Positions 21,482-64,000 of a stretch of 64,000 nucleotides of DNA are shown in pieces. Within the stretch, counting starts at the first letter, position 1, and each line of letters starts with the position of its first letter. Source of the DNA: Octopus sinensis (taxonomy: Eukaryota); assembly GCF_006345805.1 (NCBI RefSeq), contig NC_042998.1, positions 183,396,001 through 183,460,000 on the forward strand, in the 5' to 3' direction. The notes beneath the pieces are model-generated. The model was given only the letters and a program-made list of their open reading frames with translations, did not search any database and had not been told where the DNA came from. The position numbers were made by a program, and so were the translations under genes.

Positions 21482-21538
21482 ATGGCACTTACTATGTCGG
21501 ATTTGAAAGCACCGAAGCACAACGGTGATATTATGGAG
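21482..21538 (+). CDS. PUF60: PUF60 coding exon 1 ([19 protein letters not shown])
   Basis: ATGG start, strong donor GAG|GTGAGT, phase 0, directly downstream of the promoter motifs. Confidence 0.8.
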
Positions 21539-28476: not shown

Positions 28477-28519
<43 letters not shown>

Positions 28520-36625: not shown

Positions 36626-36656
<31 letters not shown>

Positions 36657-38458: not shown

Positions 38459-38489
<31 letters not shown>

Positions 38490-38667
38490 AGACTGGTTTC
38501 TTTCTAAGTTTTCCTGTATACCAAACCCATTCACAAGGCTTTGAGCAGCCTGGGGCTATAATGGAAGACACCCTAGTTGTCATGCACCTGTAACCATGTA
38601 ATTGGGAAGCAAATTCCTCAACTGAAAATGTGTGTATGTATGTATATATATATATATTATATATATA

Positions 38668-38705
<38 letters not shown>

Positions 38706-44700: not shown

Positions 44701-47700
44701 GATAATTAATGAGAAAGGTACAATGATTATGGGCAGGATATTGAGGGAAGGTAAAATAAGAAAAAGAATAGCTTTGTAGTTAAGGTAGTAGCAGAGTAGA
44801 CAAATTGAGAAGCTTAGCAGGGAAATGGAAGGGATCACTATTAGGAATAACTGAGAAAGTAGAGAGACAATGGGAAGTTGATAGGGTAAGTTGTGTAGGG
44901 GTGGTCTACAGTTGTTCTTCATTATAATGCTGAGTATGGGTAGAAGGTGTGAGAAAAAGGACAAGAAGGGAGAACTAGACTAAGGTGGCAAGGAATCCCG
45001 AGTCATTGAAGCAAAGTGAGGTTTGATCAGAGTGGATATTTAGAGGAGCAACTTGTGGATGCAATGAGGGAAAGAGAGGCTGGAGTCTATCACAAAGAAA
45101 GGGGAAGAACATGAATTCAGAGAAAGCATCTTAGATTGTAGTGAGAGAGAGGATTATGTGGAGCAGTGAATGAAAAAAGAGGTCATTCCAGTGGTGCAAG
45201 GGTAAAAGGTATTGGGTGCAATGAAGATAACCAAGAAGGATATGTGATGGTTAGTAGTGTAACAAAAATATAACATGAGATGGGACGGGGAGGCTATGAG
45301 TGATGAATAGGCTGGTCATGGAGAGTTTGGGCATGAGGATTCGAATTAAGAAAAGAATGGTTACTTGTGTGTTAAGGTGCATTTTGTCATTGGAGGGTGG
45401 GTTTTTGTAGTGCTGCATATTGCCTGTTAGTATGGTCCTTTGTCATTTCCTCTGAAATGCAGCATCTTTAGGTAACCATCACCACTTTGCCCTAAGTCTT
45501 TCTTGGTCTCCTTCCACAAGTTTCACTAATTTTGAGAGTTCAGTACTTTTGTATGCAGCTGTCCTCCTCCACTCTCTTCATATACCTGTACTTTTGCAAC
45601 TCGCTCTCTTGCACATTACACCCGTTTCCTCTTATACCCAGTTAACCTCTTAGTTCATTTGTAGTCTGGCGTTCATGCACATTAATATTATGGATCCATT
45701 GGAACATGCAGGCTTCATTTATTTCTAGTCTTTGCAAATCTTCTGCATTTGAAGCTCATGTCTTGCTACTATGCAACATTACAATTTTAGCAGAAGATTC
45801 ATACAATCTGCCCTTTACTCTGAAAAAAAAAAATCATTGTTGTTAGTGGTAATAGCTCCTTGAACTTTTCCCAGTCTGTTGTTATCCTGATTAGTATACT
45901 TTCTGAGCAACTATCTTCCTTGTTAATTATTTCTATTAGGTGTATTGCTCTAGTGCATCTGTCACATGAAGTTCATCTCTGTTAGTCTGCCTGTATTTTC
46001 ACTTCATGCCTTGTGTGTCCATAAGCTTACATTAGACACAGCATCTGATGTCTATATCTACTTTGTGGCATATGAAGCAAAGCCATTTCTCTGATGATAC
46101 TGTTTCTTACTTGCTAACATCTTAATCTATTCTAAGTTTACTTTGAGGCTAGGCGTAGCTTCCATTCTGGGAGTTTCTTCTAATTCCACTATAGATTTAG
46201 CTATGAGAACTAAATCATAAGCATTTAGGATTTCTCATGGTCAGTAGCTTTTAAGCTTCTCTGTGACTATGATGAATACGAGAGGAGTGCCTTGATGACC
46301 CTACCTTCAGGCAAAATTCCAATTACTGTATTGTTATATTTAGCATGTACAGCACTAACAAACTATTTATCTCCTTGTTTTCTTGGTAACTACCAGATTA
46401 GTGTCAAAGGCCTTCTCTGAGTTGAATGCCAGGAATAGTGGTTTGCTTTTAGCCAAGTATTTCTCTTGCAGTTGTCTAAATTGGAGCATTGCAAACATAG
46501 TACCTCTGCTTGGCATGAAGCCAAACTGCACTTAATTTAGATTCACGCTGTGATCCAATAATTAGATTCTTCTATTTTGTCTCTATGGCATCTCTTTTAC
46601 CTCGATAGCAGTTTAGAATTATACTTCTATGACAGTTTTGTATTGTTTAATTATTCCTGATGGTCATGCGTATCCTATCTCCAATATTTTTGAGCATCTC
46701 TGCAACTATTCCTAATAATCCAGTAGCTTTCTTTGACTTCATGTTAGTCATTTTATCTACTAAATTGCTGTTCTCTATAGGATCATCATGAGGTAGTCTG
46801 CACCTTTTTAACCCTTGCATTTCCCACATTCAGCAGTCTCTAATAATAGCATTTTCATACCACTTGTTTTCCTTCCACAGCAGTGGCTGGTATACCTTCA
46901 TCATTTTGGTTATACCTCTCCCCAATAGCATCTTTGTTTTCTCTAACATGCAAATCTCTTCCTTTCTGCTTCATCGTTAGCCAAGTGCACCAGTTGCATA
47001 TCTGTCTTGCTTGCTGCCTGATAATGCACTCTGCTGCTACCTTCCTTCTAGGTTTTTCAGGCCTTTCTCTTTGCCGTTACACTACTATCAAACAGGTTAT
47101 TCTGCCTTCCCATTATATTCGGTTTGGTTGGGACTTTGCACCAGGCATATGTTTCATCTGTAGCCATAAGCAGGTTTTATGTATGCATGTAGGGTTCCTA
47201 ATGTACATCTTGTCTTATCCTTCTATTTCTCCCTTACACCTTCTTACCTCCTCATCAAGACCTGCATCCACCCCACTAATGAATTTATTCAAGATCCTAG
47301 TTGCTGATAACTGGCATGGTTCAGGGATTCCAGGTTAGCTGGTGTTCCTATTCATACTGCCAGAAACTAAACATGTTTACCATTATTATGGTGTTTTTAG
47401 GATAATGGATATTCTCTCATTTTTTTTTGTCATAACAACATTTTGTGGAAGCATGAAGCTGTGTATGTGGGTTCAGTCCCACTGCGTGGGACCTTGGGCA
47501 AATGTCTTCTACTATAGCCTTGGGCCGACCAATGCCTTGTGAGTGGATTTGGTAGACGGAAACTGAAAGAAACCCGTCGTATATATGTATGTGTGTGTGT
47601 CTGTGCTTGTCCTCCCAACATCGCTTGACAACCGATGGTGGTGTTTTTATGTCCCCGTAATTTAGCGGTTTGGTAAAAGAGACCGATAGAATAAGTACTA

Positions 47701-49770
47701 GGCTTATAAAGAATAAGTCCTGGGGTCGATTTGCTCGACTAAAGGCGGTACTCCAGCATGGCTACAGTCAAATGACTGAAACAAGTACAAGAGTATATAT
47801 ATATATATATACGCATGCGCGCGCACATATATCTATATGTATGTGTATAGTGTATATATGTACGTATATATATATATATATATGTGTATATACCTATGTG
47901 TGTATATATATGTATATACATGTATGTGTATATGTATATATGCATATATGTATGTATATATTTATAAGTATATATATCTGTATATGTATGTATTTATGTG
48001 TGTATATATATGTTTGTATGTATTTATATATGTATATGTATTTATATCTATATGTATGTGTGTATACATGTGAATGTGTGTATATATACATGTAAATGTA
48101 TGTGTATGTATATAAATATATGTATGTGTATATAAATATACACGTGTATCTTGCATATGTGTGTATGTATATAGGTATGTGTATATATATATATATACAC
48201 ATATGTGTGTATATATATATGTGTGTATATATATATATGGCTGTATGGGAAGAAGCTTGCCTCTCAAGCACATGGTTCCGTGTTCAGTCTCGATGCATGG
48301 TGCTTTGGGCAAGTGTCTTGTAGTATAGCCTCGGGTTGACCAAAGCCTTGTTGGTGGATTTGGTAGACTGAAGCTGGTAGGAACCCATCATATATGTGTG
48401 TGTATGTATTTGTGTGTCTGTGTTTCCCCCCTCAGCATCGCTTGACAAGTGATGTTGGTGTTTTTATGTCCCCGTACTTAGTGTTTTGGCAAAAGAGACT
48501 GATAGAATAAGTACTAGGCTTACAAAGAATATGTCCTGGGATTGAATTGTTCGACTAAAGGTTGTACTTCAAGTGACTGAGACAAGTCGAAGAATCAAAG
48601 AATATATATCTTTGTATGTATCTGTGTGCGCGTGTAGACTCATGACTGGACCTGTGCTGGTGGCACATAAAAAGCACCATTTGATAATGGTCGATGTCAG
48701 TGTCAGCTGACTGGATTGGTGCCTGGCTCGCCAGCCCCCTGTCAAACCGTCCAACTCATGCCAGCATGGAAAGCGGATGTTAAATGATGATGATACATAC
48801 ATGTGTGTGTATATCTTTTACTGGTTTTAGCCCAAGGCTGAGGTCTTGCAGCTGCACCACCTGTAGATGTTCAGTATTGTTTTGGGGGAAGTAGTGAGTT
48901 AGGCGGAGCTGCTCTTTACATATCTTGCTGCAGTATATATATATATGTATATATACATCCGTATATGTGTATATATATATATATATATATGCATATGTGT
49001 GTGTATGTATATATATATATATATATGCATATGTGTGTTTATGTATATATGTATGTGTGTTTATGTATATATGTATGTGTGTATATATATATATATGCAT
49101 ATGTGTGTATATATATATATATATGCATATATGTGTGTGTGTATGTATGTATATATATATATATATATATATATAAGTTCAGCAAAATTTAGATTCAGAT
49201 GAATATGGTACTTAAGTCAAAGGCACCAGAATTTTGTATGGTATTATCCATATAAATCAATGGGGTGATTATAAGCAACAAGTATATCCGAGATAGAGTG
49301 GTACAATTGTTTCATGCTACTTCATTTTATTAAACACTGTAAGTATTACATCAGTTTTAAAATGTCGAGCAATCTTCAGCTACTTATAGAAATTTTCTAA
49401 TCAAACGGACAATGCACATTGTTATCTCTATATCATTTGCCAACATTATAAAGAGGGTAGATATGAGTCAGAGAGTAAATTTACTACTATCATGTTCTTA
49501 AGAATGAAATCAACCTCTCTGTCTATATATCTACCCTCTTTATAATGTTGGCAAATGAAATAGAGATAAGAATGTGCATTGTCCGTTTGATTGGAAAATT
49601 TCTTTAAGTGGCTGAAGATTGCCCAGCATTTTAAAACTGATGTAATACTTACAGTGTTTAATAAAATGAAGTAGCATGAAACAATTGTACCACTCTACCT
49701 CGGATATACTTGTTGCTTATTTTGATTATTTACATATATATGCAAATATAAGAATGTCTGTGTATGAATG

Positions 49771-49801
<31 letters not shown>

Positions 49802-52800
49802 TATATATAAGTTCAGCAAAATTTAGATTCAGATGAATATGGTACTTAAGTCAAAGGCACCAGAATTTTGTATGGTATTATCCATATAAATCAATGGGGT
49901 GATTATAAGCAACAAGTATATCCGAGATAGAGTGGTACAATTGTTTCATGCTACTTCATTTTATTAAACACTGTAAGTATTACATCAGTTTTAAAATGTC
50001 GAGCAATCTTCAGCTACTTATAGAAATTTTCTAATCAAACGGACAATGCACATTGTTATCTCTATATCATTTGCCAACATTATAAAGAGGGTAGATATGA
50101 GTCAGAGAGTAAATTTACTACTATCATGTTCTTAAGAATGAAATCAACCTCTCTGTCTATATATCTACCCTCTTTATAATGTTGGCAAATGAAATAGAGA
50201 TAAGAATGTGCATTGTCCGTTTGATTGGAAAATTTCTTTAAGTGGCTGAAGATTGCCCAGCATTTTAAAACTGATGTAATACTTACAGTGTTTAATAAAA
50301 TGAAGTAGCATGAAACAATTGTACCACTCTACCTCGGATATACTTGTTGCTTATTTTGATTATTTACATATATATATGCAAATATAAGAATGTCTGTGTA
50401 TGAATGTATATATATATAAAACAAAACAAAACAATGTATGTATGTGTATAAAAAATGATATAGAAATAACATTGTTTTAAACAATTTTCTATTGTTTCTT
50501 CAAAAATGTGATAAGTTAGAAGATATTTTTAGAATTATTTGCCTCAGTGATAAAAGTTTTTCCTATATAAATGGAAGATCACTTAAAGTTATACATACTC
50601 GTAATATTTACATCTCTTGATTTTAACAAATTGTAATTCATCCAGCAGCAAAATGTGGTTTGGAAAGAAAAGGAATTTATTACTTGATGGAAGACCAGTT
50701 TCATGCCGTCCTATTTGATTGAAAAATTATCAGCTCTTCCATATGTAGAAAACTTAATGAAAGATAAATTATCAAGCAAATTTATCTAAAGTGTTCCAGG
50801 CAACTAGTTATAGAAAATACTTTATTATTGACAAGTAGGGTTGGGTCTTTCCTTAATCATGAACTTGGATTTTGTTTTAGCTTTTAAACTTTCCTTCATA
50901 AGTATGTTATCTTATAATCTATGTGGCTCAACTAATACATAGTATGGGGATTGTTTAACAAGCTGTAAATTTATTTTATTTGAAGAATTATACAGAACTT
51001 ATTGTAAAGAACAATTCTTTACTTTTCCTTGTATATCAAAAGCATTTTCTAATTACTTTTTGCACATTGAATCTTCTTGACTTTTATCCCAACTGTTTTA
51101 TAACAGTTGCTGATAACATCTCCGTCCAACCCGTGCTAGCACGGAAAACGGATGTTAAACAATGATGATTATCATCATTTCCTTTCTGTTCAGTACATTC
51201 GCACATTTAGTGACCCAACATTCATTAACAAAAAAAAAATCTTTGTTGCTGAAATACTAGAATTAATTCTCATATCAACTTTAAAGTAACATTAATACTG
51301 TTTTTTGATTAGCATCCTTCATTCTGTTCAACTACAGAGTAGATTAGTGTTTAATATTATACCCATAAAAGCATTAAATTCCCTAACACTGGCTTTATTG
51401 ATACATGTAAAGAAATCTGAAGTCAAAAGTGTAGTAATAGAAATTAATAATAAACATATTGTGTATATATAGGTAATATATGTATGTATAAATGTACGTA
51501 CGTATATGTAATGCTATTTACTGAAAATTCTAAAAGTTATGGAATAAGAATAACATGGAATATAATTTGTTAGGACTGCAGAATACTTATTGAATGAAAA
51601 TAATATTTGCCTTGAAGGAAAATGCTTTGCTTTTTATAAACTGCATATTCATATGGAACTTTCAGTTCATAAATAAAATTGTATAATCCTATTAGATTTT
51701 GTTTTTGTAAACAATGCTAACTCCATGAAATCAATTAACTATATCCTGTTTGTTTATGGGCCCCCTTTAAAAAGTTTTGATAGTGAAATATTGCTAGGTT
51801 GTTTATATCCTTCCTGATTTCAGTCTTCAGTTCAGGCACACCAAATTTAGGATATTTAAACCTGTTTTATGTTCAGACTGGCCAGATCTGGTCTCTCACA
51901 CCAACCCTACAATATCGTTTTAAAAAGTAACAGCTACCTCATCAAAATCTCATAGCACCAATATAATGCCTGATTAGTTCAAGGCAATGTGGATAAAAAA
52001 GGATTAATTTTGGCAGAATAATGCAAACACTAAAGGGTTAATTTTGTATCTAGTTTTTGGTGATATTGGAAGATTAATTCATCAAATTTCCAATTCCCTG
52101 AAGTTTATAACCTATCTAACTCATTAAAGACATTAGATGCCCTCCCTCCCACTTTTTTCCAAATAATTGGGAGTTATTTCACTTTAATGTCACTTATACC
52201 AATAATAATATCCTAATCTTCTAAACATTAAGTTAAAAAAAAAAAACCCAACAAAATGTAAGTTATAATTTGTCAGAGGAGCAGTGTTTCATGAGAATAC
52301 CATTTATTTTAGTATAAAACATTAAGCACATTTTCCAACCTGCTCCCAAATTTTTAACTCTTTCAGTAATTTTTGCCTGATCTAGAATATTCCAAGGACA
52401 GTGTCACTATTAAATGATATATTTTAGCCAATCTAGAAAGCATCTGCGTTTATTCTCTTTATGTTGTTCTTAAATGCTATTTTTCTCTCTTTTTTTGTGT
52501 TTTTATATATCAGTAAGAAGTTCAATATTGCTCGTGCCACCCTTACGGCCAGCTGTTTTATGGGGCTTTTGGTGAGACTACAGTGGCCAAAATTAGGGCC
52601 AAACTGGAGGCAATCAGTCGATCGGTGCTTGTGATGTGGTAATCCTTATTTCACATGAATATATTGTAAATTGTTTGATTCCTAAATACTGACAGCCTAT
52701 ATCTACTGGTGCACATCATTGATATTTTCTCTCTACGACTCTTGATTAGTAATCACTGAAACTTTTAAAGCAATATTAGTCTGGATGATCTAATATTCTT

Positions 52801-55800
52801 GCTCTCATACTTTAATTTTTTTAATGTATCTTCCCTTTTTATATTTTTCTCCATATCCCTTAAGGACTATGTCTGTGCCTCAAATAAAAAAAAAATAATC
52901 TTGTCTCTGCCCCAGTCTTCATTTGTCTTGGCCCTGTTCATATTCCGGCTCTTTTTTCTTTTTCTTTTTTTTTTTTTTTTTTACACAATATCATTATATA
53001 GTTTCTTCCAATACATGTCCTATTTTTAATTGTTTATTTAACTATCTTTTGGTTTTGCTGACAGATTTGGCTGCAGAAGAACTACAAACGCCACAGGCTG
53101 AACAAATAGGTCCCATTGTTGAAGGTCCCGGTGCAAAAAGAGACCAGAAACCATTTGTGTTGCCCAAATTGACAGCATCTCAACAAGAAGCTATACAGAA
53201 AGCTAAGAAATATGCAATGGAACAAAGTATTAAAAGTGTCCTGGTGCGACAGACCATTGCTCATCAACAACAGGTAAATTATGTGTGTGTGTGTGTGTAT
53301 ATATATAAATAAATAGAAGACCCAGCAACTAAAGTCCAGACCAGTTAAAAGTACCCCTGATGCATTGGGTGATATGATATGCTTGAGAAGACCTTTTGAG
53401 TCAAGTAAAATCAATATCATAGCTGTGGCCAGTGCCCTCTGACTGGCTCCTGTGCCAGTGACAACGTAAAAAGCACTAGCTGAATGTGGTCAATGCCAGG
53501 TCCACCTGACTGGCTCCCGTGCCTGTGTCACGTAAAAAGCACCGTCCGAACATGGCCGATGCCAATACCTCCTGACTGGCTCCCATGCCAGTGGCACATA
53601 AAGCATGGCCAATGCCAGAACTCCCTGACTGGCTCCCGTGCCAGTGGCACATAAAAAGCACTATCCAAACCTGATTGATGCCAGGCCTGCCTGAGTGACT
53701 CTTGTGCCAGTGGCACATAAAAAGTACCCACCACACTTGGAGTGGTTGGCGTTAGGAAGGGCATCTGGCTGTAGAAACACTGCCAGATCAGATTGGAGCC
53801 TGGTGCACTTGCTGGCTCTCCAGACCTCAGTCAAACTGTCCAACCCATGCCATCAGTGGAAAATGGACATTAAATGATGATGCTGTGTATTATGTTTATA
53901 TTTTTCATGCTAGTATATGGTTTTTGATAGTTTGCTTTGTTTGGATTAGCTACTTTTATATTTAGATGTCTGTCTTATTTGTAAAGTAACTAAATAGATC
54001 TGTGAGTTTGATTTGTTCCAGCTTAGTCAACTGTTATGTGACTGATTATTGAACAGAACCTTAACATGGCCCTCAAGCAGAATCAGCATGAGACAGTATG
54101 TGTGAGATAAAGCTGCCTTTGTGAATTACAAGTACATTCTTTCACGCAGTTTCCTTCTAACCATTTCTCACTCCTTGGGATTAAGTTAACCCAAGTCCAT
54201 GGTAGACAATACTTACTCTAAATGCTGTGAGGTGGGATTTAATCTGAGACCTAATAGTTGCAAAGTGAATGGGTCATAATGTAGAAGCTGCTCAGAGATT
54301 CATTAGTATTTCATTGGTAACTCTGGGTAGCTTCCTTTTGTTATATTTGCTGTGAAATAAATAAATAAAAAAGTTCTTTTTGTTTATAGTAATTAGTCAC
54401 TGTAGTTTTATCTGGAACACTTAAAGTAGAATGAGTAAACAAATTTGGTCAGTGGGCTTCAGGTCAGACAGACTATGATTATGTCTGGTTTCTTTAGAAA
54501 ATTTGGAAGCGGAACACTTTTTAAAGTTTCTCACCCATTCTGTTTCTAGACACAATCCATTATCATTGTCTGAATTGTTTTCACTGTTAAAAGTTGAAAT
54601 GTGATGCTTGTTGCCTTGTTTTTTGTCTTCTTGCTTTAGCTATTTCTTTGAGAAGATTCTTCAAATTCAGATTAAACATGATAATCATCAGATTGATAAT
54701 TTGATTTGACCTTTAAATACCAACTCACCTGAGGCTGTCAATTTATGTTCGAAAACACCAGCTTAATAAGAACCAAGTTATTTTACTAACATCTACATTA
54801 TTTTAAAAATTAATTGAAATAGTCATTATTTTTCAGTAGAAATATGGGAAAAAAAAAAAAGGTTAAATAGAAATATTTAAATCAGACTAGTCTTTGTCCT
54901 TCATATCTATATAGTAAATGTTTTGTTTGTTTTTTTTTATTTTAATGTTTTTCTATAATTTAAAACAAGTTTTTCATATTTTAGATATTTACTGTCATTT
55001 AAAATTATTCTTTCTGTTTTCAGCAAATGGCAAACTTTCAAAATACTGTTCAAAGGCAGCAGGCCTTAGCATTAATGTGCAGGTAAGTTATTTCAATTAT
55101 CAAAACTAGCTTTCTTTTTGCCCCTGGGAGCTCCTCTATGCTGACTACCTTGCTCTAATTGCTGAGTCACTATCAGAACTAGAGAAGTTTCAGGTTTGGA
55201 AGCAAGGATTAGAATTGAAAGGCCTAGCTAAAACCAAAGTCCTAATAAGTAGGAAGGCAGACAAACCACAAATCCCTTCTGGTAGATGGCCCTGCTTAAT
55301 CTGTAGAAATGGCGTAGGAAGATAGTTTTTGTATGTGGCAGATGCTCAGGAGCAATAAACACTGAAAATGTGCAGAGAGCAACTTCCGCCATATTCCAAG
55401 GAGAAAAACTAGTTGTAGTTGATAGCTTCTGTTACCTAGGTGACCAAGTCAGTAGCTGGGGAGGGTGCACTGAAAGTGTAGCTGCTAAAATAAGAATAGC
55501 CTGGGCAAAGTTCAGAGAGCTCTTACCTCTGCTGGGAACAAAAGGCCTCTCACTCAAAATAAAAGGTAGACTGTATGATGCATGTGTACGAACAGCCATG
55601 CTATATGGCAGTGAAACATGGGCCGTGACTGCTGAGGACATGCATAAGCTCGCAAGGAATGAAGCCAGCATGCTCCGATGGATGCGTAATGTCAGGTGCC
55701 TACTCAACAGAGTGTAAGCACCTTGAGAGAGAAGTTGGACATAAGAAGCATCAGATGTGGTGTGCAAGAGAGATGACTGCACTGGTATGGTCATGTGGCG

Positions 55801-58800
55801 AGAATTGATAAGGATAGCTCTGTGAAAAAGTGCCACATCCTAGCGGTTGAAGGAACCTGTGGAAGAGGTAGACCCAGGAAGACCTGGGATGAGGTGGTGA
55901 AGTATGACCTTCGAACATTAGGCTTCACTGACGCCATGACTAGTGACCAAGACCTTTGGAAATATGCAGTGCTTGAGAAGACCAGGCAGGCCAAGTGAGA
56001 CCATAACCCGTGGCCTATGCCAGGGTGTGACCAGCCCACTTACGTGTACCTTTTCTTCATTGGACACTAAAATCTGCTTGCAAAGACCTGTTGAGGCAAG
56101 TGAAATTGAAATCAAATCAAATTTGATGACTTGCACCTGTGCCAGCGGAGTGCTAAGAGCACCATCCGAGCGTGATCGTTTCCAGAGCAGCTAACTGGCT
56201 TCCATGCCGGTGGCATGTAAAATGCCAGTGGCACGTGAAAAAACATTTGAGTGAAGTCATTGCCAGTGCTGCTGGACTGGCTCCTGTGCAGGTGGCACGT
56301 AAAAAACACCATTTGAGCATGGCTGTTGCCAGTACCACCTGACTGGCCCTCGTGCCGGTGGCATGTAAAAGCACCCACTACACTCAGTGGTTGGGTTTAG
56401 GAAGGGCATCCAGCTGTAGAAACTCTGCCAGATCAGATTGGAGCCTGGTGCAGCCATCTGGTTTGCTAGTCCTCAGTCTAATCATTCAACCCATGCTAGC
56501 ATGGAAAGCGGACATTAAACGATGATGATCCATTTTATGTCACAACCCTGTGTAATTTCTGGCTTGGTCTGACAATGGGAATCAGATTTGTCAGTATTGT
56601 TTAGTAGCTTGCTAATCCTTGAGTCAATCTTTCCACAGAATGTCCAAATGTGTTGCTTAATTGAGGTAGTTAAATTTTTTTTATATAAATTTCCTTGTGT
56701 TCACCAGGGTAACGGACGCTTTCTAGTGTTGTATGTGTAGTTACACAAGTTGTCTCTCTTGGTCGCGTCTCATTTTTCTGTTAGTGTAATCTCAGTTCTT
56801 AAATTTCATTTTCCTAATTCACATTGAAAGTATTTCCAATTTTAACCTATTTTCTCTTTTCTAAAATATATTAGAATCATAGGAAAACGTTTTTTTGCCC
56901 AATTTAATTTTGAGTTATTTCCTAAAGGTTAAAATAGAATAAATTCTAAATAGTTCTATGCTATTTATTATATGACCAATTATCAAATTGCATATTAGAA
57001 TAATAGTTTCAATAAAGATTTTCTTCTTTTTCACAGGATTTATGTTGGTAGCATAAATTTTGAAATCAAAGAGGATACAATAAAGCAAGCTTTTTTACCA
57101 TTTGGTCCTATAAAGAGTGTCAATCTCTCTTGGGACCCTGTGACTAATAAACACAAAGGCTTTGCTTTTATTGAATATGAAGTCCCTGAAGCTGCCCAGC
57201 TGGCTTTGGAACAGATGAATGGTGTCATGATTGGTGGTAGGAATATTAAGGTAAATTTTAATTTTTTCTATCTTCTGCTATTCCCACCAATGTTTTTATC
57301 CTTGTGAATTATACATGTATCATTATAAAGGAAATATAAAGCAAAGGGTAAAGACCCCCTTCGGTCATGAATGACTATGGGATTGCACCTAGAAAGTTAC
57401 CCTCCTAGACACAAGTCCGGGCAAGGTTGTTTTATGGAAGACCAGCAGTTGCCCATGCATACCAGCCTCCCCTCTCCACACCACCAGTGTTATCCAAGGG
57501 AAAGACAAAGGTCGATACAGCTTGGCACCAGTGACGTCGCAACTCATTTCTACAGCTGAGTGAACTGGAGCAACGTGAAATAAAGTGCCTTGCTCAAGAA
57601 CACAACACGCAGCCCAGTCCGGGATTCGAGCTCACAACCTCACGATCGTAAGCCCGACGCTCTAACCACTGAGCCATGCGCCTTCACAATATAAATTTAA
57701 AAAAGGAAATATAAATTTTAAAAAAACACAGCCAGTATTTTCTTGGTGAAATTATTTAACCCTATTTTTCTTAATAGTGTAGTTCCTCATATGTGGGTCA
57801 TAAAATATTCTTTCTTTTTATTTGACTGAACCCATGAACCCAGGCAAGCAACTTGTGAGGAAAAAAACATATCAAATTCTTAATTTCTGGGATTTATTTA
57901 GAAGCACGGAAAAGCCTATTAGAGCTCACTTTGTGTTTTCTTAAAAAACCAAGTAAAAAAAAAACTTATAGAGAAATAAGACATGTAAATGCAGAATCAA
58001 AATTTCTTAGAAAACTAAGAGACAAAAACTTATAGAGGAAGACATGTGAATGCAGAATCAAAAATTACCTCCCCCAGTCCATATTCTGTGCATATTTTAA
58101 AACAAATATTTGAAAACAAAATGTGGCGCATATAATTTCATGAAAATAGCATCTGGTTCATTCATTTTTTGATTTGACTGATATCAGAGGTGTAAGTGGA
58201 TTCAAATTATTGTCTCTTTGGGAAGGGAAGAAATTAATGAAATTATTTGTACATGTGTAAGTTAGCCTATATTTTATACAGTGTAGCGAGTTTTTGAGTA
58301 GCTCAGAAATAACTAAATTTAAAATGTTCTTTGATTTTGTACGTTCATTGAAAAAATACATTCATCATCATCATCATTTAACATTCGTTGTCCATGCTGG
58401 CATGGGTTGGATGGTTTCAGCGGGCTAGCACACTGGAAGGCTGCACCAGACTCCAGTCTGATTTGGCATGGTTTTCTACAACTGGATGCCCTTGCTAACG
58501 CTAACCACTCTGAGTGTAATGGGTGCTTTTGCATGCCACTGGCACGGGTGCCAATTTGCGTGACACCAGTATCTGCCACAACTGATTTTGCTTGGCTTGG
58601 TGGGTCTTCTTCTCATGCATGACATAATGCCAATGGTCTCGGGTCATTACATCTGTGAAGTCCCACACTTGAAAGTAACTCAGCCACTTTATCTCTGCGA
58701 GGCCCAATGCTAGAAAGGGACTCAACCGCTTTGTTGCAGTACTACAAATGGTTTTAAGAAAAAAAAAATGTTAATAGAAGTTCTATGAGCTCAGTTCTTT

Positions 58801-61800
58801 TAATAATAATTTCTTATATTGGGAAGAGTTCACATATTTATTGGTTAGATATAACCCAGTTCATAATTGATAACTCAAGTTATCCATTCCTGGATGAATG
58901 AAAAGTCAAAATTAACCCAATACTTTTGAACTAAGAACATTTTAGTCTGTTAATCTTGGTTAATAGACTTAACCTGATTCTTAGGTATCTTTTGATAAGT
59001 CCATTCTGTTGCAACCACTTAGCCTGAGTTTTTGGCCTTAGAGTATCCTGATGTCTTGACTACAGTAATTTGTGACTTTTTTCCTTTGTCCAATTCCTCA
59101 GTCATGGAGGTCATGGAAAATTTGCATGCCTTACCCATCATCCTACAATAAAACCATAACAAATATTAAAAAAAAAAAAATTAATCACCCTTTTATTTCA
59201 ACAACAACAAGTGGAATGTTTGTGTACATTCACATTTCCATTTGAAATGCAAAACCTTACATAAAAAAAACTATTTGCATGCCATTTTTTTTCACATTCT
59301 GAATTTTAGAAAAACTGAAATGTTCTAACTACAAGCAGCTTTTATACATAACATATAATACCTTAGAGTTTAATATAACTTGTCTTTGTTTTAAAGGTTG
59401 GTCGACCAAGCAACATGCCTCAAGCTCAGCCCATTATTGAACAGCTTGCTCAGGAAGCAAAGAATTTTAACCGAATCTACATTGCATCCATACATCAGGA
59501 TTTGACAGAGATGGATATACAAAGGTTTGTATTTGATATATATATCAGAAGATACTTGTCTGAGATGTTATGCAAAGACATCATTTTTAAATGAATATAT
59601 TAACCCTTTCGTTACCAACCCGGCTGAAACCAGCTCTGGCTCTTTAGTACAAATGTCTGGTTTTCAAAAGTTCTGAATTAAAATTTTCCACCAAACCTTA
59701 ATCACAATTTATGTTCCTAAAACTAGCTTAATGATAACTAAGTTATTTTACTAAATACTTTGTTATATTTAAAGTAATTGGAAGAAACACAGAGCATCTG
59801 AAAATAAATACAGTAACGAAAGGGTTAATATTGCTAATATCAGCATTATGACTGAATATGCTGGGTGTTACAAAACAGGATTCGCAGAGCATGGGCTAAA
59901 AATGAAACTAAATCTAGTCCCATTTGATACATTTCTGATAATGAAGCAGTTAGGTAGTTGGTGATTAACAATGCAATCTTCTGAATTATAAGATTATATT
60001 TCCAATTAACGACATTGCCACTGATAAACTACGTGTTAGTAATAAATCAGGTTTCACATTGAAAATACCTCATCAAAATCATCATCATTCCTCATCTAAA
60101 TAAAAATTGTTTTAAAAAATTTAAATTGTACAATGGTAATTATGTTTCTTAATTTTTTCCTTTATTTCTTTTAGTGTCTTTGAGGCATTTGGGAAGATTG
60201 TGACTTGTAAACTCTCTCAAGACCCAACAAAACCTGGCAAACATAAGTATGCATTAAGTCTTTTGTATATTTTTTCTAAATTTATTTCTTCATTTCCTGT
60301 TAAATGTATGTTGTTGAGTTTAGAGTAGGATGAATTTAGAATAATACATTGAAGTTTGCTATGAAAACAAATATTCTTGAATGCAAATTTGAAAATAAAT
60401 CTTTCTGCAAGAACTTACATTTTCTTATTTAGAATCTGCTCATAAAACTATAAAAATAAATATTGATTGGATTTGTTAAAATGTTAATTAGAACAAGTGT
60501 ATAATTTGAATTAATATTATGAATCTAAATTTTAGTAATTTCTTTATTATGATTAAAGCTTGAAAAGTAAAACTTGCAGTAAACCTATGTATAAAAATCC
60601 CTTGTCACTGTACAAAAGGTTTTTTTGTTCGTTTTGAACTGGGACTAACTTTTTATGTTATAGAAGTTACGGCTTCATAGAATACGAAACACCTCAAGCC
60701 TCTGAAGATGCAGTTTCATCTATGAATCTCTTTGATCTTGGTGGTCAATATCTACGTGTTGGAAAGGTAATTATCATGCATTGCAGAAATTTTTAATTTT
60801 TTTTTATTTTATCTTATTTAATTCAAATTTAATGATAGTTGGTGTCTGAATTGTAGGATATTTAAAAAAATTTTTACTGTATAAAATTGTTTTAATGTCT
60901 CTCAACAAATAACATAGAATTAACTTTGTATAAATCTCAAAGAAAACCGTTTACAGTATCATGAATAAAACTTTGTAATACTTCAGTTTTATGGAAATAT
61001 TGACAAGTATTAACTTACTGGAAATATAAAACACAACTGCTATATTTTTTAAGTAATAGTGTATTTTTATATTAGTCTCAACAAAGCTTTTCATATTAAT
61101 TATCAAATGAAGGCTTGTATGGATTACACAATATTAGAAATCTTTCCTTATTTCTATTCTAGAGAATTAATTTCTCATTGTTTTTATATACAACTAGCTC
61201 TATGTGTGGGTGAGGGTGTGGTTGTTACTTTCTGTTGCTTCCTTTCTTTTTCTTATCGCCACATTCTCCCTCTTCTTTCTCTCACTTTCCCACTCTCTCT
61301 CTCCCATTTATAAAAAGCAAAAGATCTTGAGTAAGTTGAGAAAGAAAATATTTTGAAAGATCAATCATAAATATCAGGCAGTGACAACGGAAAGCACACT
61401 TGCCTTTTGTACATGCCACTATTTGAGCGATTAAAAATAAGGGAAAAAAGGGATTTCTTTGTTAAATTTAGTACTTATTTTAGGAATTTTTCGACAGTTG
61501 ACCATGCAAATGAAAGCTCTAAACATGGGCTACATGCAGCTGTAAATTTCTTTCAGAAAAAAATGAAAACTGTAAACAATAAAAAATAAAAGGCAAAAAT
61601 ACATAAAAATGAGAAATTTTTTTCAACTTCAAAAATCTTGTCTTAATTTTCAAAATTTCGAACCCATTTTCCATGCTTAAATTATAAATTTGCTTCCACT
61701 TTACCATGTTGAAAATTTGATTGAAATCAGGCAAACTCCCACCAAGTGTCCCCCAAAATCTGTTCCCATCCCAAAATGAGACAAACGAATTTTTCGCATT

Positions 61801-64000
61801 TCAGCTTTATAGATATTGATTCGTTTTACCTTCATTATACTGCTATATTACTTTCTCTATTCCTTCATTTTCAATCTTTATTATTAGTTATTAACAATGA
61901 TTATCGTTAACTGAATTTTATCTTCCTTCCAGGCTGTGACTCCACCAAACGCTTTACAACCACCGTCAGGTCCCAGTAGCATGCCAACTGCTGCAGCTGT
62001 AGCTGCTGCAGCAGTTACTGCAAAGATCACAGCAATGGATGCTCAACAACAAGCTGTTGGTGTAATGGGTGGTAGTTTGGTGAGTATATTGCTTTCACTT
62101 AAGCTTTCATCCTCTCTCCAGCAACAGTAAAATAAAGTACCAATCATATACTAGAGTTGATTGAATTGACCGTTCCAAAACCTTTGTAAGCTTTCCAAGC
62201 CTGACATGGCTGCACTTGATGCTCACATTGGACTTAAGAAGGTTGAGCATCATTTAAGCAAAACATAGGTGGTGATGTGGATTACAAGGGATAACAGCTA
62301 TGAAAAATAAGGATTGGAAAAGCTTTTCAAATAAGGCAGTATTAGCTGCCTTCTGGGGGGATGGTAGAAAATTTTTTATGGGTACTTGGGATAAAAGGGG
62401 TAGTGGGGAGGTTGTAGGGGACAATAAGGCTTTTAAGTGATAACCTGCTAGTTAGCCACGATCACAACAATGACGATATCAATACTGGCAGAAACGTTAG
62501 CATGCCGGGCGAAATGCGTAGCCGTATTTCGTCTGCCATTATGTTCTGGGTTCAAATTCCGCCGAGGTCGACTTTGCCTTTCGTCCTTTCGGGGTCGATA
62601 AATTAAGTACCAGTTACGCACTGGGGTCGATGTAATCGACTTAATCCGTTTGTCTGTCCCTGTTTGTCCCCTCTGTGTGTAGCCCCTTGTGGGTAGTAAA
62701 GAAATATATCAATAAAAGACTTTGAAATGTGAATAAACAAACAACTAAAAGTATGCTATTTATGCATGTAAATTATAAGCGATAAACAAAAAAGTATTTC
62801 CATAAATACAATTAAGATAGCTACTGCACTTGTAGTGTTTGCTAGTGTCATGACTTGGATACAGATGCTACCTAAATGTCCTCCCACAAGATCAAAAAAT
62901 TGTGTGGATATTTAGATTAATGTCCAATTACAATTTTCTCATAAAACTTTTAAATTACCATTTCTCAAAAAATATTTTTAATTTTTACTTTGTGTGCTGA
63001 TCAAGGTTCAAACAGGTTTTTGTTATGGTCTTGAGAGACTGAGTCTTTACAATGCTATTTTAACCAAGTTATATATCCACGGACCTTTGGTAAATCAAGG
63101 GCCTAGTTTGATATCTACTGCCTGAATGCTGTTTGGTAATTGCTGTGTAAGATCATTAATTGTGAAGCGTACCTTTTGTTGTGACTTCAGAAATTTCAGC
63201 TGTTCATGTGTAGAAGAGACTGTTTCCATGTGAAGGGATTGACTTTTGATGTTGTTGAAGAAAATAGATGAAAGCGGATTTAACAATTATGTCTATGGAA
63301 GTAGTTCAAAATGTAACATGAAAGGACTTGTTGCAAGCAGATGATACATGTGCACAGAAGGTTACAGTGGAGTGAAAAGTGGTATGTTATTAGACATGGC
63401 AGCAAGTGGGGAAGAGTGGGACATATAAACTAAGTTTGGAGTTCACCATAATAGATAGAATTTAGATTGTAGAAGCAGTTTAATTGGAAACAGATGAGGC
63501 AAGAGACGCTGATGAAGCGCATATTGCAGGCAACTTGGCTAAGTTCTCATGCCAGATATAGTCTAGATTTGGGTCAACTGAGGTTTCGTTTTTAGAGTTG
63601 TACTCATGTGTGCATGTGTGTCTCTGTCCCCAAAAACTAATTAGAAAAATTTTCTATTTGATAAATTATTGATTCCTTTTTTTTCTTTCATTTTCTTGTG
63701 TAGGCACCACCTGGTCTAGCAATGCCAACTGCACTTGGAGCCAACAACAACATTGGAGCTACAGTATCAACCAGTGCATCTACATCAGCTGCCTCACCTC
63801 TGATGGATTCAGCCAGTCCCATTTTGAGCAGTTCTGGTATTGCCACATCACAAGTAACAACTGTAACAAACCAAACTGGTATTGCTGCGTCAGCTTCTCC
63901 TCTTTTCTGTTCTGAATCCATGGTTACTATTCCAGCACCTCTACCTGCAGCTGCTCCATTAACAGCTTCACAGACTCAGATGCAGGCATCCGCAGCAGCT
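21482..64000 (+). CDS. PUF60: Poly(U)-binding splicing factor PUF60 / half-pint, 3'-incomplete. Core exons: 21482-21538, 32998-33046, 53065-53273, 55024-55082, 57037-57250, 59397-59524, 60175-60246, 60664-60766, 61933-62079, 63704->64000 (445 codons in window)
   Basis: The spliced frame is open throughout with matching phases. It contains hallmark motifs [105 protein letters not shown] and [15 protein letters not shown]. Confidence 0.96.
21777..22186. mobile_element. 410-bp TIR element (~100-bp arms) flanked by a 15-bp direct repeat
   Basis: Arms ATCTTTCGTCTCTAGTAGACCTTTCCGTCG... and its reverse complement; TTATAAATTTTAATT at 21762-21776 and 22187-22201. Confidence 0.85.
22723..23058. repeat. 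Compound (TA)/(TATC) microsatellites
   Basis: Read directly from the sequence. Confidence 0.9.
26200..26505 (-). mobile_element. Two adjacent truncated SINE copies (13356 family)
   Basis: GGCGGAATTTGAACTCAGAACG and related motifs occur twice. Confidence 0.75.
29300..30021 (+). mobile_element. Degenerate Tc1/mariner transposon, DD37D (maT-like) transposase remnant with right TIR
   Basis: Across frameshifts it reads [16 protein letters not shown]...WPPN(S)PDCNP*D, EAVVEA. There are 37 residues between the 2nd and 3rd Asp after restoring one base. It ends GAACATCCTG|TA. Confidence 0.8.
31925..32727. repeat. Long foldback (inverted repeat): arms ~31925-32293 and ~32381-32727, 87-nt loop
   Basis: The arms are reverse-complementary along their length, with scattered substitutions and one ~27-nt indel. 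Confidence 0.9.
32998..33046 (+). CDS. PUF60: PUF60 coding exon 2 ([16 protein letters not shown]+G)
   Basis: Acceptor TTGTTGTTTCAG, donor G|GTAAGT. Phase 0 to 1 bridges exon 1 to the 53065 exon exactly. Confidence 0.85.
35151..35175 (+). CDS. PUF60: Candidate PUF60 microexon A (25 nt; GDEMLASF+GA)
   Basis: Acceptor TATTTTTCAG, donor GA|GTAGGT. In frame when joined to the 17-nt exon at 39234. Confidence 0.65.
35264..35330 (+). CDS. PUF60: Candidate PUF60 alternative exon B (67 nt)
   Basis: Long pyrimidine tract plus TTTGCAG acceptor, donor GAT|GTAAGA. Same phase (1 to 2) as exon A; open in both relevant frames. Confidence 0.45.
39234..39250 (+). CDS. PUF60: Candidate PUF60 microexon C (17 nt; +YIPVP+G)
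   Basis: Long T tract plus ATCAG acceptor, weak donor CTG|GTAGCT. Restores the frame after exon A or B. Confidence 0.6.
44690..45350 (-). mobile_element. Decayed L2/CR1-like LINE remnant
   Basis: Purine-rich on the plus strand with weak RT-like traces on the minus strand. Confidence 0.35.
45440..47340 (-). mobile_element. Decayed RTE LINE fragment (~1.9 kb)
   Basis: The minus strand reads [11 protein letters not shown]...[22 protein letters not shown] near 46.4-46.55 kb. Confidence 0.75.
47440..48600 (+). mobile_element. Two tRNA-SINE copies (47440-47790, 48238-48600; same family as 11412-11780) separated by a long TA/TG microsatellite
   Basis: CTTGGGCAA(A/G)TGTCTT core and GATAGAATAAGTACTAGGCTT body in both copies. 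Confidence 0.85.
48930..49175. repeat. Compound TA/TG microsatellite
   Basis: Read directly from the sequence; it generates spurious Y/I/M/C-rich ORFs. Confidence 0.9.
49175..50420. repeat. 634-bp tandem duplication; each unit contains a 450-bp foldback element (49271-49720, 49905-50354; 194-bp arms, 62-nt loop)
   Basis: The units appear identical except for (TA)n lengths. The arms start ATAAGCAACAAGTATATCCGAG. Confidence 0.92.
53065..53273 (+). CDS. PUF60: PUF60 exon ([11 protein letters not shown]...QTIAHQQQ)
   Basis: Contains the conserved [22 protein letters not shown] motif; ACAG acceptor, CAG|GTAAAT donor. Confidence 0.95.
53345..53882 (+). mobile_element. RTE 3'UTR copy with expanded ~40-bp internal repeats
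   Basis: Repeated GACTGGCTCC(C/T)GTGCCAGTGGCAC units followed by the standard tail. Confidence 0.85.
55024..55082 (+). CDS. PUF60: PUF60 exon ([20 protein letters not shown])
   Basis: TTTTCAG acceptor, AG|GTAAGT donor. Confidence 0.95.
55122..56529 (+). mobile_element. RTE LINE 3' 1.4 kb (RT end, post-RT region, 3'UTR, GAT tail), starting about 40 nt after a PUF60 donor
   Basis: [14 protein letters not shown] (YADD mutated); ORFs 55370-55717 and 55795-55998 (FCYLGD...[12 protein letters not shown]...LYGSETWA...GRGRPRKTW). Confidence 0.92.
57037..57250 (+). CDS. PUF60: PUF60 exon encoding RRM1
   Basis: Encodes [71 protein letters not shown]. Confidence 0.97.
57341..57687 (-). mobile_element. 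tRNA-derived SINE with a Nin/Deu-like central domain and an 8-bp TSD
   Basis: The minus strand reads GAAGGCGCATGGCTCAGTGGTTAG...TCGAATCCC, then TTGAGCAAGGCACTT...GCTCCAGTTCACTCAGCTG. AATATAAA at 57333-57340 and 57688-57695. Confidence 0.85.
58362..58735 (-). mobile_element. RTE 3' copy, antisense to PUF60
   Basis: (TCA)n followed by the reverse complement of the RTE 3'UTR. Confidence 0.85.
59397..59524 (+). CDS. PUF60: PUF60 exon (RRM1-RRM2 linker and RNP2 of RRM2)
   Basis: Encodes [43 protein letters not shown]. Confidence 0.96.
59604..59824. mobile_element. piggyBac-type MITE (221 bp)
   Basis: TTAA|CCCTTTCGTTAC ... GTAACGAAAGGG|TTAA. Confidence 0.88.
60175..60246 (+). CDS. PUF60: PUF60 exon (RRM2 middle)
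   Basis: Encodes [24 protein letters not shown]; TTTTAG acceptor, AA|GTATGC donor. Confidence 0.95.
60664..60766 (+). CDS. PUF60: PUF60 exon (RRM2 RNP1 and C-terminal half)
   Basis: Encodes [34 protein letters not shown]; branch-point-like GACTAAC upstream, AAG|GTAATT donor. Confidence 0.96.
61933..62079 (+). CDS. PUF60: PUF60 exon (AVTPP...[16 protein letters not shown]...)
   Basis: CCTTCCAG acceptor, TTG|GTGAGT donor, 49 codons. Confidence 0.94.
62485..62705 (+). mobile_element. 5'-clipped SINE (13356 family) with a 9-bp TSD
   Basis: ATATCAATA at 62476-62484 and 62706-62714. Confidence 0.88.
63704..64000 (+). CDS. PUF60: PUF60 exon, Ala/Ser/Thr/Pro-rich linker; continues beyond the window
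   Basis: Long pyrimidine tract plus TAG acceptor; 99 open codons [12 protein letters not shown]...QASAAA in phase 0. Confidence 0.88.

What the first reader, a model, noticed from the sequence alone, without database searches (positions are those of the whole stretch)
60661..60667. RRM2 RNP1 glycine is genomically serine (AGT): candidate restorative A-to-I recoding site overlapping a NAGNAG acceptor
Seen in sequence: the spliced frame reads KHK-S-YGFIEY, whereas RRM1 of this gene has [10 protein letters not shown]. Established: PUF60 orthologues have KGYGFIEY, coleoid cephalopods recode extensively by A-to-I editing, and ADAR favours a 3' G. Editing A60665 turns AGT into GGT (Gly) and restores the consensus. 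The same A is the A of the distal AG in the tandem acceptor TAG|AAG. Use of the distal AG would give KHN-YGF (one residue shorter), and editing would remove that option. Inference: editing could tune the RNA binding of a core splicing factor and be coupled to acceptor choice.
Basis: partly seen in the sequence, partly recalled or inferred. Interest (0 to 1): 0.72.

Follow-up and report, generated by a model that had tools for sequence, protein, structure and literature searches.

The report
Octopus PUF60 serine, tandem splice acceptor
In the octopus gene for the splicing factor PUF60, a usually conserved glycine is a fixed, genome-encoded serine whose codon also created a two-way (3-base) splice acceptor that gene annotations already show, and nothing I could check indicates that RNA editing turns it back into glycine.

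Summary
The window is Octopus sinensis chromosome CM016860.1. It carries PUF60/half-pint, and the junction 60246|60664 reads KHK-S(AGT 60665-60667)-YGFIEY where 91% of orthologues have Gly. TAG|AAG (60661-60666) is a tandem acceptor.

The editing interpretation has no support from anything testable here:
- The A is present in three independent Octopus assemblies and in an RNA-derived contig of a deeply diverged cephalopod.
- Ser at this position arose independently in lineages without extensive recoding: a teleost paralogue (AGC), cyst and root-knot nematodes (AGT) and an annelid-like transcript (TCG). Mussels and ticks have Glu. Gly is therefore not obligatory.
- I found no stable local fold, no complementary partner within about 3 kb, and no extra synonymous constraint around the site.
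- No PUF60 site appears in the editing literature I could reach.

Both tandem-acceptor products (KHKSYGF and KHN-YGF) are already annotated in O. bimaculoides and O. sinensis.

Best reading: an ordinary lineage-specific GGY>AGT substitution that incidentally created a NAGNAG acceptor. Only RNA reads can settle whether the site is edited, and I could not examine them. Interest is low.

The parts
21482..64000 (+). PUF60/half-pint orthologue. Coding exons: 21482-21538, 32998-33046, 53065-53273, 55024-55082, 57037-57250, 59397-59524, 60175-60246, 60664-60766, 61933-62079 and 63704 to beyond 64000. The C-terminal UHM domain lies beyond the window end.
   Evidence: tblastn of orthologues and of the annotated product P0241 against the window. 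The spliced ORF has no stops and is 100% identical to the annotated cluster P0121.
57149..57178 (+). RRM1 RNP1, [10 protein letters not shown] (Gly = GGC)
60175..60246 (+). Exon encoding [24 protein letters not shown] + AA (the first two bases of the split Lys/Asn codon)
60247..60663 (+). 417-nt phase-2 intron, GTATGC...TTATAG. The position and phase are conserved in Lottia gigantea and Heterodera schachtii.
60644..60649 (+). ACTAAC, a candidate branch point. The putative branch A at 60648 lies 15 nt before the proximal AG and 18 nt before the distal AG.
   Evidence: Read from the sequence. This is a consensus match only and is an inference.
60646..60669 (+). Weak 8-bp hairpin: TAACTTTT (60646-60653) pairs with AGAAGTTA (60662-60669). 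It covers the branch-point A and both AGs, and A60665 pairs with T60650.
   Evidence: ViennaRNA folds. The region is no more stable than shuffles (z = +0.33).
60661..60663 (+). Proximal acceptor TAG. The exon then starts at 60664 and the product is KHKSYGF.
   Evidence: annotated products P0240, P0241, P0242, P0244
60664..60666 (+). Distal acceptor AAG. The exon then starts at 60667 and the product is KHN-YGF.
   Evidence: Annotated products P0121 (O. bimaculoides) and P0243 (O. sinensis)
60665..60667 (+). AGT Ser codon at RNP1 position 2 of RRM2. A60665 is the proposed editing site.
   Evidence: The base is identical in O. vulgaris and O. bimaculoides. The cephalopod transcript L001 also has AGT.
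60664..60766 (+). Exon encoding (K)[34 protein letters not shown], that is, RNP1 and the rest of RRM2

Best explanation
The Ser is a genomically fixed, lineage-specific replacement of the RNP1 Gly of PUF60 RRM2. It arose by a single GGY>AGY transition at a position that tolerates Ser, and even Glu, in other animals, and it has been kept in cephalopods for a very long time. The intron here is phase 2 and the preceding codon base is A. The new AGT therefore incidentally produced a TAG|AAG tandem (NAGNAG) acceptor. The spliceosome uses mostly the proximal AG (KHKSYGF) and sometimes the distal one (KHN-YGF), giving two protein isoforms that differ in the first residues of RNP1. No RNA editing is needed to explain what is seen. 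If A60665 is edited at all, it is most likely at the low background level typical of coleoid coding adenosines. Shown: the substitution, its conservation, the tandem acceptor, the annotation of both products, and the tolerance of Ser/Glu elsewhere. Inferred: the direction of change, which acceptor is the major one, and the absence of meaningful editing.
For: (1) Three independent assemblies carry TTATAG|AAGTTAC: O. sinensis (the window, identical to L003), O. vulgaris (L004) and O. bimaculoides (L005).
(2) A 2.7-kb intron-less, hence RNA-derived, Logan contig reads AAA AGT TAT (L001). It comes from a cephalopod whose 4-fold sites are saturated against Octopus (48/161 identical) and whose protein is 88-93% identical.
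(3) Census of 285 orthologue representatives: G 259, S 15, E 9. Ser outside cephalopods occurs in a teleost paralogue (Arctogadus, AGC), in Heterodera, Globodera and Meloidogyne (Heterodera AGT at the same phase-2 intron), and in an annelid-like transcript nearest to Capitella (TCG). Glu occurs in Mytilus and in ticks.
(4) The outgroup Lottia has the same intron position and phase, with cag|G GGA (Lys-Gly) and no tandem acceptor.
(5) Both isoforms are present in NCBI-sourced protein sets for two species: P0242/P0121 on the 192.5-Mb O. bimaculoides chromosome and P0241/P0243 on the 207.9-Mb O. sinensis chromosome.
(6) There is no ADAR-type substrate. MFE z-scores are +0.33 (pre-mRNA) and +0.07 (mRNA). 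The best duplex partner within about 3 kb is -25.7 kcal/mol, against -23.3 +/- 2.0 (minimum -27.9) for shuffled probes.
(7) There is no extra synonymous constraint at the site. Between O. sinensis and O. bimaculoides, exons 5 and 6 differ at 3/72 and 3/103 bases with no amino-acid change, which are among the most diverged coding exons. Intron 5 differs by 4.9%.
(8) Bradley et al. 2012 (PMC3250501) report that the proximal NAG is intrinsically preferred, that a purine at -4 (here A) shifts use to the proximal site, and that Ser AGY is a residue typically gained at NAGNAGs of phase-2 introns.
Against: No RNA reads were examined, so editing is not excluded. Coleoids edit a few percent of coding adenosines, and 'restorative' sites are edited more often than synonymous ones (PMC6881472). 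The triplet A-A-G is a favourable ADAR context by established knowledge, although 41 of 378 coding As in the window share it. Gly is still the state in 91% of orthologues, so Ser may carry some cost. The read support behind the annotated KHN-YGF isoforms could not be inspected, and the relative use of the two acceptors is unknown. The taxa of L001 and L002 were inferred from sequence similarity only.
Confidence: 0.72

Rival explanations
1. A60665 is deaminated by ADAR at an appreciable level in neural tissue, so part of the protein pool regains the consensus Gly. Because the same A belongs to the distal AG, editing before splicing also removes the KHN-YGF option.
For: The ancestral state is Gly and the derived codon is AGT, so the site is formally a potential restorative site as defined in PMC6881472. 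The 5' A and 3' G neighbours are favourable by established ADAR preferences. The A is conserved in Octopus and in a deep cephalopod branch.
Against: No predicted duplex of useful length was found: only an 8-bp local hairpin or a 13-bp imperfect exon5:exon6 helix, with z about 0, and no partner within about 3 kb better than shuffles give. There is no synonymous constraint around the site. The RNA-derived contig L001 carries A. Ser is tolerated without editing in fish, nematodes and an annelid-like species, once as TCG. The median level of restorative sites is below 2.5%, and only about 13% of them exceed 20% in squid. No literature record exists for PUF60. Editing before splicing would also create an AI dinucleotide at 60664-60665, a possible frameshifting acceptor.
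Confidence: 0.05
2. The site is edited only at a low, promiscuous level (about 1-5%), like tens of thousands of other coleoid coding adenosines, with no consequence for RNA binding or acceptor choice.
For: In 3,587 genes, O. vulgaris has 19,014 synonymous, 2,818 restorative and 30,760 diversifying editing sites, and most are edited at low levels. The neighbour context is favourable.
Against: As above, there is no structural support. This reading is also compatible with the best explanation, since it adds noise rather than function.
Confidence: 0.15
3. The functional feature is the tandem acceptor itself. Regulated use of TAG versus AAG switches RNP1 of RRM2 between K-S-Y-G-F and (H)-N-Y-G-F and so tunes RNA binding. 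The Ser may additionally be a phosphorylation site in a basic context (KHKS).
For: Both isoforms are annotated in two species. The motif is conserved in three Octopus species. Many NAGNAGs are tissue-regulated (PMC3250501). Glu, a negative charge, is tolerated at this position in mussels and ticks. The candidate branch point lies unusually close to the proximal AG, at 15 nt.
Against: There are no usage data. NAGNAG minor isoforms are often splicing noise. The three Octopus species are too close to show selection on the motif (intron divergence 0-5%). The phosphorylation idea rests on sequence context alone.
Confidence: 0.12
4. The A is an assembly error or a polymorphism of the sequenced individual.
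For: None found.
Against: The same base is present in three assemblies made independently from three species, and in a transcript of a distant cephalopod.
Confidence: 0.01

Closest known systems
NAGNAG tandem 3' splice sites (Bradley et al. 2012, PMC3250501; Hiller et al. 2004, recalled from memory)
   Same: Two AGs lie 3 nt apart at an intron end, and both Ns are not G (TAG, AAG). The products differ by one residue plus a changed junction codon. The intron is phase 2 with an AGY Ser codon, the configuration that paper reports as typical. Both products are annotated.
   Different: Usage ratios and any regulation are unknown here. The affected residues sit in the RNP1 motif of an RRM of a 3'-splice-site recognition factor, which is an unusual place for a one-residue indel.
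Restorative A-to-I recoding under the harm-permitting model in coleoids (Jiang & Zhang 2019, PMC6881472)
   Same: The ancestral state is G, the derived genomic base is A, and A>G would restore the ancestral amino acid. The species is a coleoid.
   Different: That class is defined by observed editing, and none has been observed here. Ser at this position also exists in lineages without extensive recoding, so the G>A change need not have been harmful.
Editing-splicing coupling: ADAR2 self-editing that creates an AI 3' splice site, and the GluA2 R/G site next to a 5' splice site (both recalled from memory, not tested)
   Same: In both cases an edited adenosine lies within 1-2 nt of a splice site, so editing can change splice-site identity.
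   Different: Those substrates have well-defined intronic complementary sequences that form long duplexes. None is detectable here.
Ser>Gly auto-recoding site of insect Adar (PMC10826634, listed)
   Same: An AGY Ser codon that can be recoded to Gly by A-to-I editing.
   Different: In insects the editing is demonstrated, and the Ser was selected to be editable. Here editing is hypothetical.
PUF60 / FIR / half pint RRM2 (PDB 2QFJ, 5KW1, 2KXF, 3UWT, 7Q8A)
   Same: The octopus RRM2 aligns almost residue-for-residue with human PUF60 (phmmer E-values 5.7e-55 to 6.9e-54 for those chains). The RNP1 is otherwise identical (K-x-YGFIEY).
   Different: RNP1 position 2 is Ser instead of Gly, and there is one extra residue in the beta2-beta3 loop (PTKPGKH versus PT-TGKH).

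Membership tests
PUF60 / half-pint poly(U)-binding splicing factor | Two N-terminal RRMs with PUF60-type RNP1 motifs; best matches are PUF60 orthologues and solved PUF60 structures | tested here: met
   tblastn and phmmer hits are named PUF60/half pint. PDB PUF60 chains match at E-values from 5.7e-55. Pfam RRM_1 is precomputed on the hits.
PUF60 / half-pint poly(U)-binding splicing factor | C-terminal UHM (third, atypical RRM) | tested here: met
   The domain lies beyond the window end. It is present in the annotated product of the same gene (P0241, ending ...RVMVLRNMVGPEDLDDELE...GRYFGGRIVKAETYDQDMFDANDLSG), which is encoded by locus L003, identical to the window.
Alternatively used NAGNAG tandem acceptor | NAGNAG at the intron-exon boundary with neither N being G | tested here: met
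   TAG AAG at 60661-60666
Alternatively used NAGNAG tandem acceptor | Both junctions seen in transcripts | tested here: inconclusive
   Both products are present in NCBI-sourced annotation of two species. The underlying reads could not be inspected.
Alternatively used NAGNAG tandem acceptor | Motif conserved in related species | tested here: met
   Identical in O. vulgaris and O. bimaculoides. The exon start AAGT is also present in the deep cephalopod transcript L001, whose genomic acceptor is unknown.
A-to-I (ADAR) recoding site | A in genomic DNA and G in a fraction of RNA reads from the same individual | not testable with these tools
   No read data are available. The protein database holds no cephalopod transcript fragments over this region. 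The one RNA-derived contig has A.
A-to-I (ADAR) recoding site | The site lies in a double-stranded RNA region of roughly 15-20 bp or more | tested here: not met
   Only an 8-bp hairpin or a 13-bp imperfect helix is predicted, with MFE z of +0.33 and +0.07. The best duplex within about 3 kb is within the range of shuffled controls. These are predictions only.
A-to-I (ADAR) recoding site | Favourable neighbours (5' not G, 3' G) | tested here: met
   The triplet is A-A-G, but 41 of 378 coding As in this gene's window portion share the context, so it is not specific.
A-to-I (ADAR) recoding site | Reduced synonymous divergence around the site, reflecting constraint on structure | tested here: not met
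   Exons 5 and 6 differ at 3/72 and 3/103 bases between O. sinensis and O. bimaculoides, against 3/401 in the RRM1 exons.
A-to-I (ADAR) recoding site | Listed in a published editome | tested here: inconclusive
   PUF60 does not occur in the text or held supplements of PMC4384741, PMC8382921, PMC6881472 or PMC9989829, nor in full-text searches. The large site tables of Liscovitch-Brauer 2017 and Birk 2023 are not held.
Restorative editing (Jiang & Zhang 2019) | The post-editing amino acid equals an ancestral state | tested here: met
   Gly is present in 259 of 285 orthologues, including the molluscan outgroups. Lottia has GGA at the same intron position.
Restorative editing (Jiang & Zhang 2019) | The site is actually edited in the focal species | not testable with these tools
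   See the rows above.

The most novel reading that the evidence does not exclude
A60665 is edited to a substantial level (20% or more) in octopus neural tissue. This would restore the RNP1 glycine of PUF60 RRM2 and, on the pre-mRNA, erase the distal AG of the tandem acceptor. ADAR activity would then set both the sequence and the splice isoform of a core 3'-splice-site factor.
Probability: 0.03. Interest if true: 0.65.

Novelty: new member of a known kind. Interest (0 to 1): 0.2.

Why it matters
As it stands, the finding matters little. It is a conserved cephalopod-specific Gly>Ser change in an RRM motif plus one more NAGNAG acceptor, both already implicit in public annotation. Two modest points are worth keeping. 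First, RNP1 position 2 of PUF60 RRM2 is less constrained than the textbook consensus suggests, because S arose at least four times and E twice. This warns against inferring 'restorative editing' from a consensus mismatch alone. Second, a single G>A transition simultaneously changed a residue and created an alternative acceptor inside an RNA-binding motif, which is a clean example of how NAGNAGs arise at phase-2 introns. If editing were shown, the site would be a rare case of editing-splicing coupling in a splicing factor. That needs RNA data.

Tried and rejected
- I looked for a G-bearing transcript variant in the protein collection with three queries of different length. The tool appears to return only hits of roughly 0.57-1.75 times the query length. 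The octopus cluster has 6 genome-derived members and no transcript fragments. This is absence of data, not evidence against editing.
- I searched the editing literature and held supplements for PUF60 and found nothing. The Liscovitch-Brauer 2017 manuscript is not held, and Birk 2023 did not turn up in a search.
- I tried to identify the species behind SRR27666087 and ERR6349723 from papers and found nothing. Their affinities were therefore inferred from identity.
- Genomic loci for chiton and scallop orthologues and for P0121/P0243 were not on record, because only the longest isoform is indexed. Lottia, Heterodera and Arctogadus were used instead.
- Rfam and tRNA scans of the window found nothing. 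ORF scans of the rest of the window gave only low-complexity or repeat ORFs.
- Rejected: assembly error (three assemblies agree). Rejected: Ser gained by NAGNAG insertion (the orthologues have the same length here, so it is a substitution). I did not run AlphaFold on the two isoforms, because it is insensitive to single-residue changes and would not test function.
Full report
**1. What is in the sequence**

Window 60661-60667 is TAGAAGT. The upstream exon (60175-60246) ends ...CCT GGC AAA CAT AA and is followed by GTATGC. The 417-nt intron ends TTATAG at 60663. Joining 60246 to 60664 gives AAA CAT AAA AGT TAC GGC TTC ATA GAA TAC, which is KHK-S-YGFIEY. Joining 60246 to 60667 gives AAA CAT AAT TAC GGC, which is KHN-YGF. 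RRM1 of the same gene reads [10 protein letters not shown] at 57149-57178.

**2. Gene and organism**

tblastn and two database searches identify the gene as PUF60/half pint. Its coding exons in the window are:
- 21482-21538
- 32998-33046
- 53065-53273
- 55024-55082
- 57037-57250
- 59397-59524
- 60175-60246
- 60664-60766
- 61933-62079
- 63704 to the window end

The UHM domain lies beyond the window but is present in the annotated product. A locus fetched from GCA_006345805.1, CM016860.1, is 100% identical to the window over 12,001 bases. PMC10700109 names that accession as Octopus sinensis, GCA_951406725 as O. vulgaris and GCA_001194135.2 as O. bimaculoides.

**3. Is the A real and conserved?**

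- O. vulgaris is identical across 60150-60790.
- O. bimaculoides differs by 4.9% in this intron but keeps TTATAG|AAGTTACGGC.
- A Logan contig (L001, SRR27666087) holds an uninterrupted 621-aa PUF60 ORF in 2.7 kb, so it derives from RNA. It is the nearest relative of the octopus protein, at 93% identity in conserved columns, whereas no other mollusc exceeds about 81%.
- L001's 4-fold sites are saturated against Octopus (48/161 identical), so it is a deep cephalopod branch. It reads AAA AGT TAT.

An assembly error or polymorphism is excluded. The Ser codon is old, and in that RNA sample the assembled base is A.

**4. Is Gly obligatory at this position?**

Human PUF60 structures have GKHKGYGFIEY. 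Among 285 orthologue cluster representatives, G occurs 259 times, S 15, E 9 and 'N' 2.

Ser outside cephalopods is found in:
- a teleost paralogue (Arctogadus CGG AGC TTT; also Phyllopteryx)
- plant-parasitic nematodes (Heterodera, Globodera, Meloidogyne). Heterodera has tag|G AGT at the same phase-2 intron.
- a transcript whose closest named relative is the annelid Capitella, where the codon is TCG and so cannot be turned into Gly by A-to-I editing

Mytilus and ticks carry Glu. These lineages are not known for extensive recoding (general knowledge). The position therefore tolerates Ser, and even an acidic residue, without any 'restoration'. This removes the main premise of the editing argument.

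**5. Origin of the tandem acceptor**

Lottia gigantea has the same intron at the same phase: AAA CAT AA|gtaagt ... tttcag|G GGA TTT (Lys-Gly), with no second AG. One GGY>AGY transition therefore explains both the Ser and the creation of TAG|AAG in cephalopods (inference).

Bradley et al. 2012 (PMC3250501) report three relevant points:
- Ser (AGY) is one of the residues most often associated with NAGNAGs at phase-2 introns.
- The proximal NAG is intrinsically preferred.
- A purine at -4 (here A60660) shifts use towards the proximal site.

I therefore expect KHKSYGF to be the major form (inference). A perfect ACTAAC at 60644-60649 puts a likely branch A only 15 nt from the proximal AG. That short distance could help the distal AG compete, but this is speculation.

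**6. The distal product is already annotated**

The protein cluster that matches the window at 100% has six members, sourced from NCBI, UniRef and nr. P0242, P0244, P0241 and P0240 read KHKSYGF. P0121 (on the 192.5-Mb O. bimaculoides chromosome) and P0243 (on the 207.9-Mb O. sinensis chromosome) read KHN-YGF and are one residue shorter. So both NAGNAG products are annotated in two species. By my knowledge of NCBI's pipeline, such isoforms need transcript support, but I could not see the reads. No member has Gly. That is uninformative for editing, because annotated proteins are translated from the genome.

**7. Indirect tests of editing**

- Structure: folding +/-100 nt gives an MFE no better than shuffles (pre-mRNA z = +0.33, mRNA z = +0.07). 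A60665 is paired only in an 8-bp A/U-rich hairpin (60646-60653 with 60662-60669) or, after splicing, in a 13-bp helix with G-U pairs and a bulge to exon 5.
- Long-range partner: a duplex scan of the 41-nt segment around the site against 57.3-63.7 kb gives a best energy of -25.7 kcal/mol. Shuffled probes give -23.3 +/- 2.0, with a minimum of -27.9.
- Constraint: the two exons flanking the site are among the most diverged coding exons between O. sinensis and O. bimaculoides (3/72 and 3/103, with no amino-acid change).
- Context: A-A-G is favourable for ADAR by established knowledge, but 11% of the coding As here share that context.
- Literature: no paper combines PUF60 with cephalopod editing, and PUF60 is absent from the held supplements of four editome papers.
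- Base rates: PMC6881472 defines restorative editing and the harm-permitting model. It reports 2,818 (O. vulgaris) and 1,960 (O. bimaculoides) restorative sites in 3,587 genes, a median restorative level below 2.5%, and only 13% of such sites above 20% in squid.

With my own rough denominator, a few percent of coding As are detectably edited. From this I put the chance of any detectable editing here at about 0.15-0.2, and of a level that could matter at about 0.03-0.05.

**8.

If A60665 were edited before splicing, the distal AG would indeed be lost (AAG becomes AIG). However, A60664-I60665 would then read as AG. That is a potential acceptor 2 nt into the exon, and using it would shift the frame. 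Coupling of editing to acceptor choice also requires a duplex that forms on the pre-mRNA, and none is predicted beyond the 8-bp hairpin.

**9. Verdict**

The best explanation (confidence about 0.7) is an ordinary, ancient, genome-encoded Gly>Ser substitution at a tolerant RNP1 position. It incidentally produced a NAGNAG acceptor whose two products are already in public annotation.

Restorative editing coupled to splicing is not excluded, but nothing I could test supports it. Matched DNA and RNA reads would decide it in an afternoon. This is a new member of a known kind (a NAGNAG acceptor), and interest is low (0.2). The most novel surviving reading has a probability of about 0.03.

Noticed in passing
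window 55024-59524 (exons 55024-55082, 57037-57250, 59397-59524): The exons encoding the pre-RRM1 segment, RRM1 and the start of RRM2 are much more conserved between O. sinensis and O. bimaculoides (3 differences in 401 nt) than the other coding exons (22 in 827 nt; Fisher p = 0.03). If any part of this gene is under RNA-level constraint (structure, editing or splicing enhancers), it is here rather than at the flagged site.
   Followed up: partly
window 53016-53064; proteins P0121 and P0242: The O. bimaculoides annotated products start with about 85 residues ([13 protein letters not shown]...[17 protein letters not shown]). The stretch nearest exon 3 matches the intron sequence just upstream of that exon. 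The O. sinensis and O. vulgaris models instead use short exons at 21482-21538 and 32998-33046. The former looks like an annotation artefact.
   Followed up: partly
L008 (Heterodera schachtii JBICCN010000319.1), locus position about 1810-1830: The nematode PUF60 orthologue has the same phase-2 intron and independently carries AGT Ser at RNP1 position 2, giving tag|GAG T. This converges on the octopus arrangement, but with a GAG second triplet, which is rarely used as an acceptor.
   Followed up: partly
window 12528-12698 and 53439-53721; also 53627-53882 versus 56275-56527: Copies of a dispersed repeat built of units of about 53-66 nt (core ...GTGCCACCGGCAC... / ...GTGCCAGTGGCACATAAAAAGCACC...) occur in opposite orientations. 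A 78%-identical direct pair lies in two PUF60 introns. Inverted copies within one pre-mRNA would be more plausible ADAR substrates than the flagged site.
   Followed up: no
window 9422-9722: A 148-bp unit is duplicated in tandem at 99% identity.
   Followed up: no
window 22726-23050, 38635-38703, 47827-48239, 48934-49175: Long TA / TATG-type microsatellites, which produce the only 'long ORFs' in the region.
   Followed up: no
tool behaviour: the search for homologous proteins returned only hits between about 0.57 and 1.75 times the query length (221 aa gave 127-387 aa; 409 aa gave 346-700 aa; 128 aa gave 80-224 aa). A short query therefore hides full-length orthologues. This cost one search.
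   Followed up: yes
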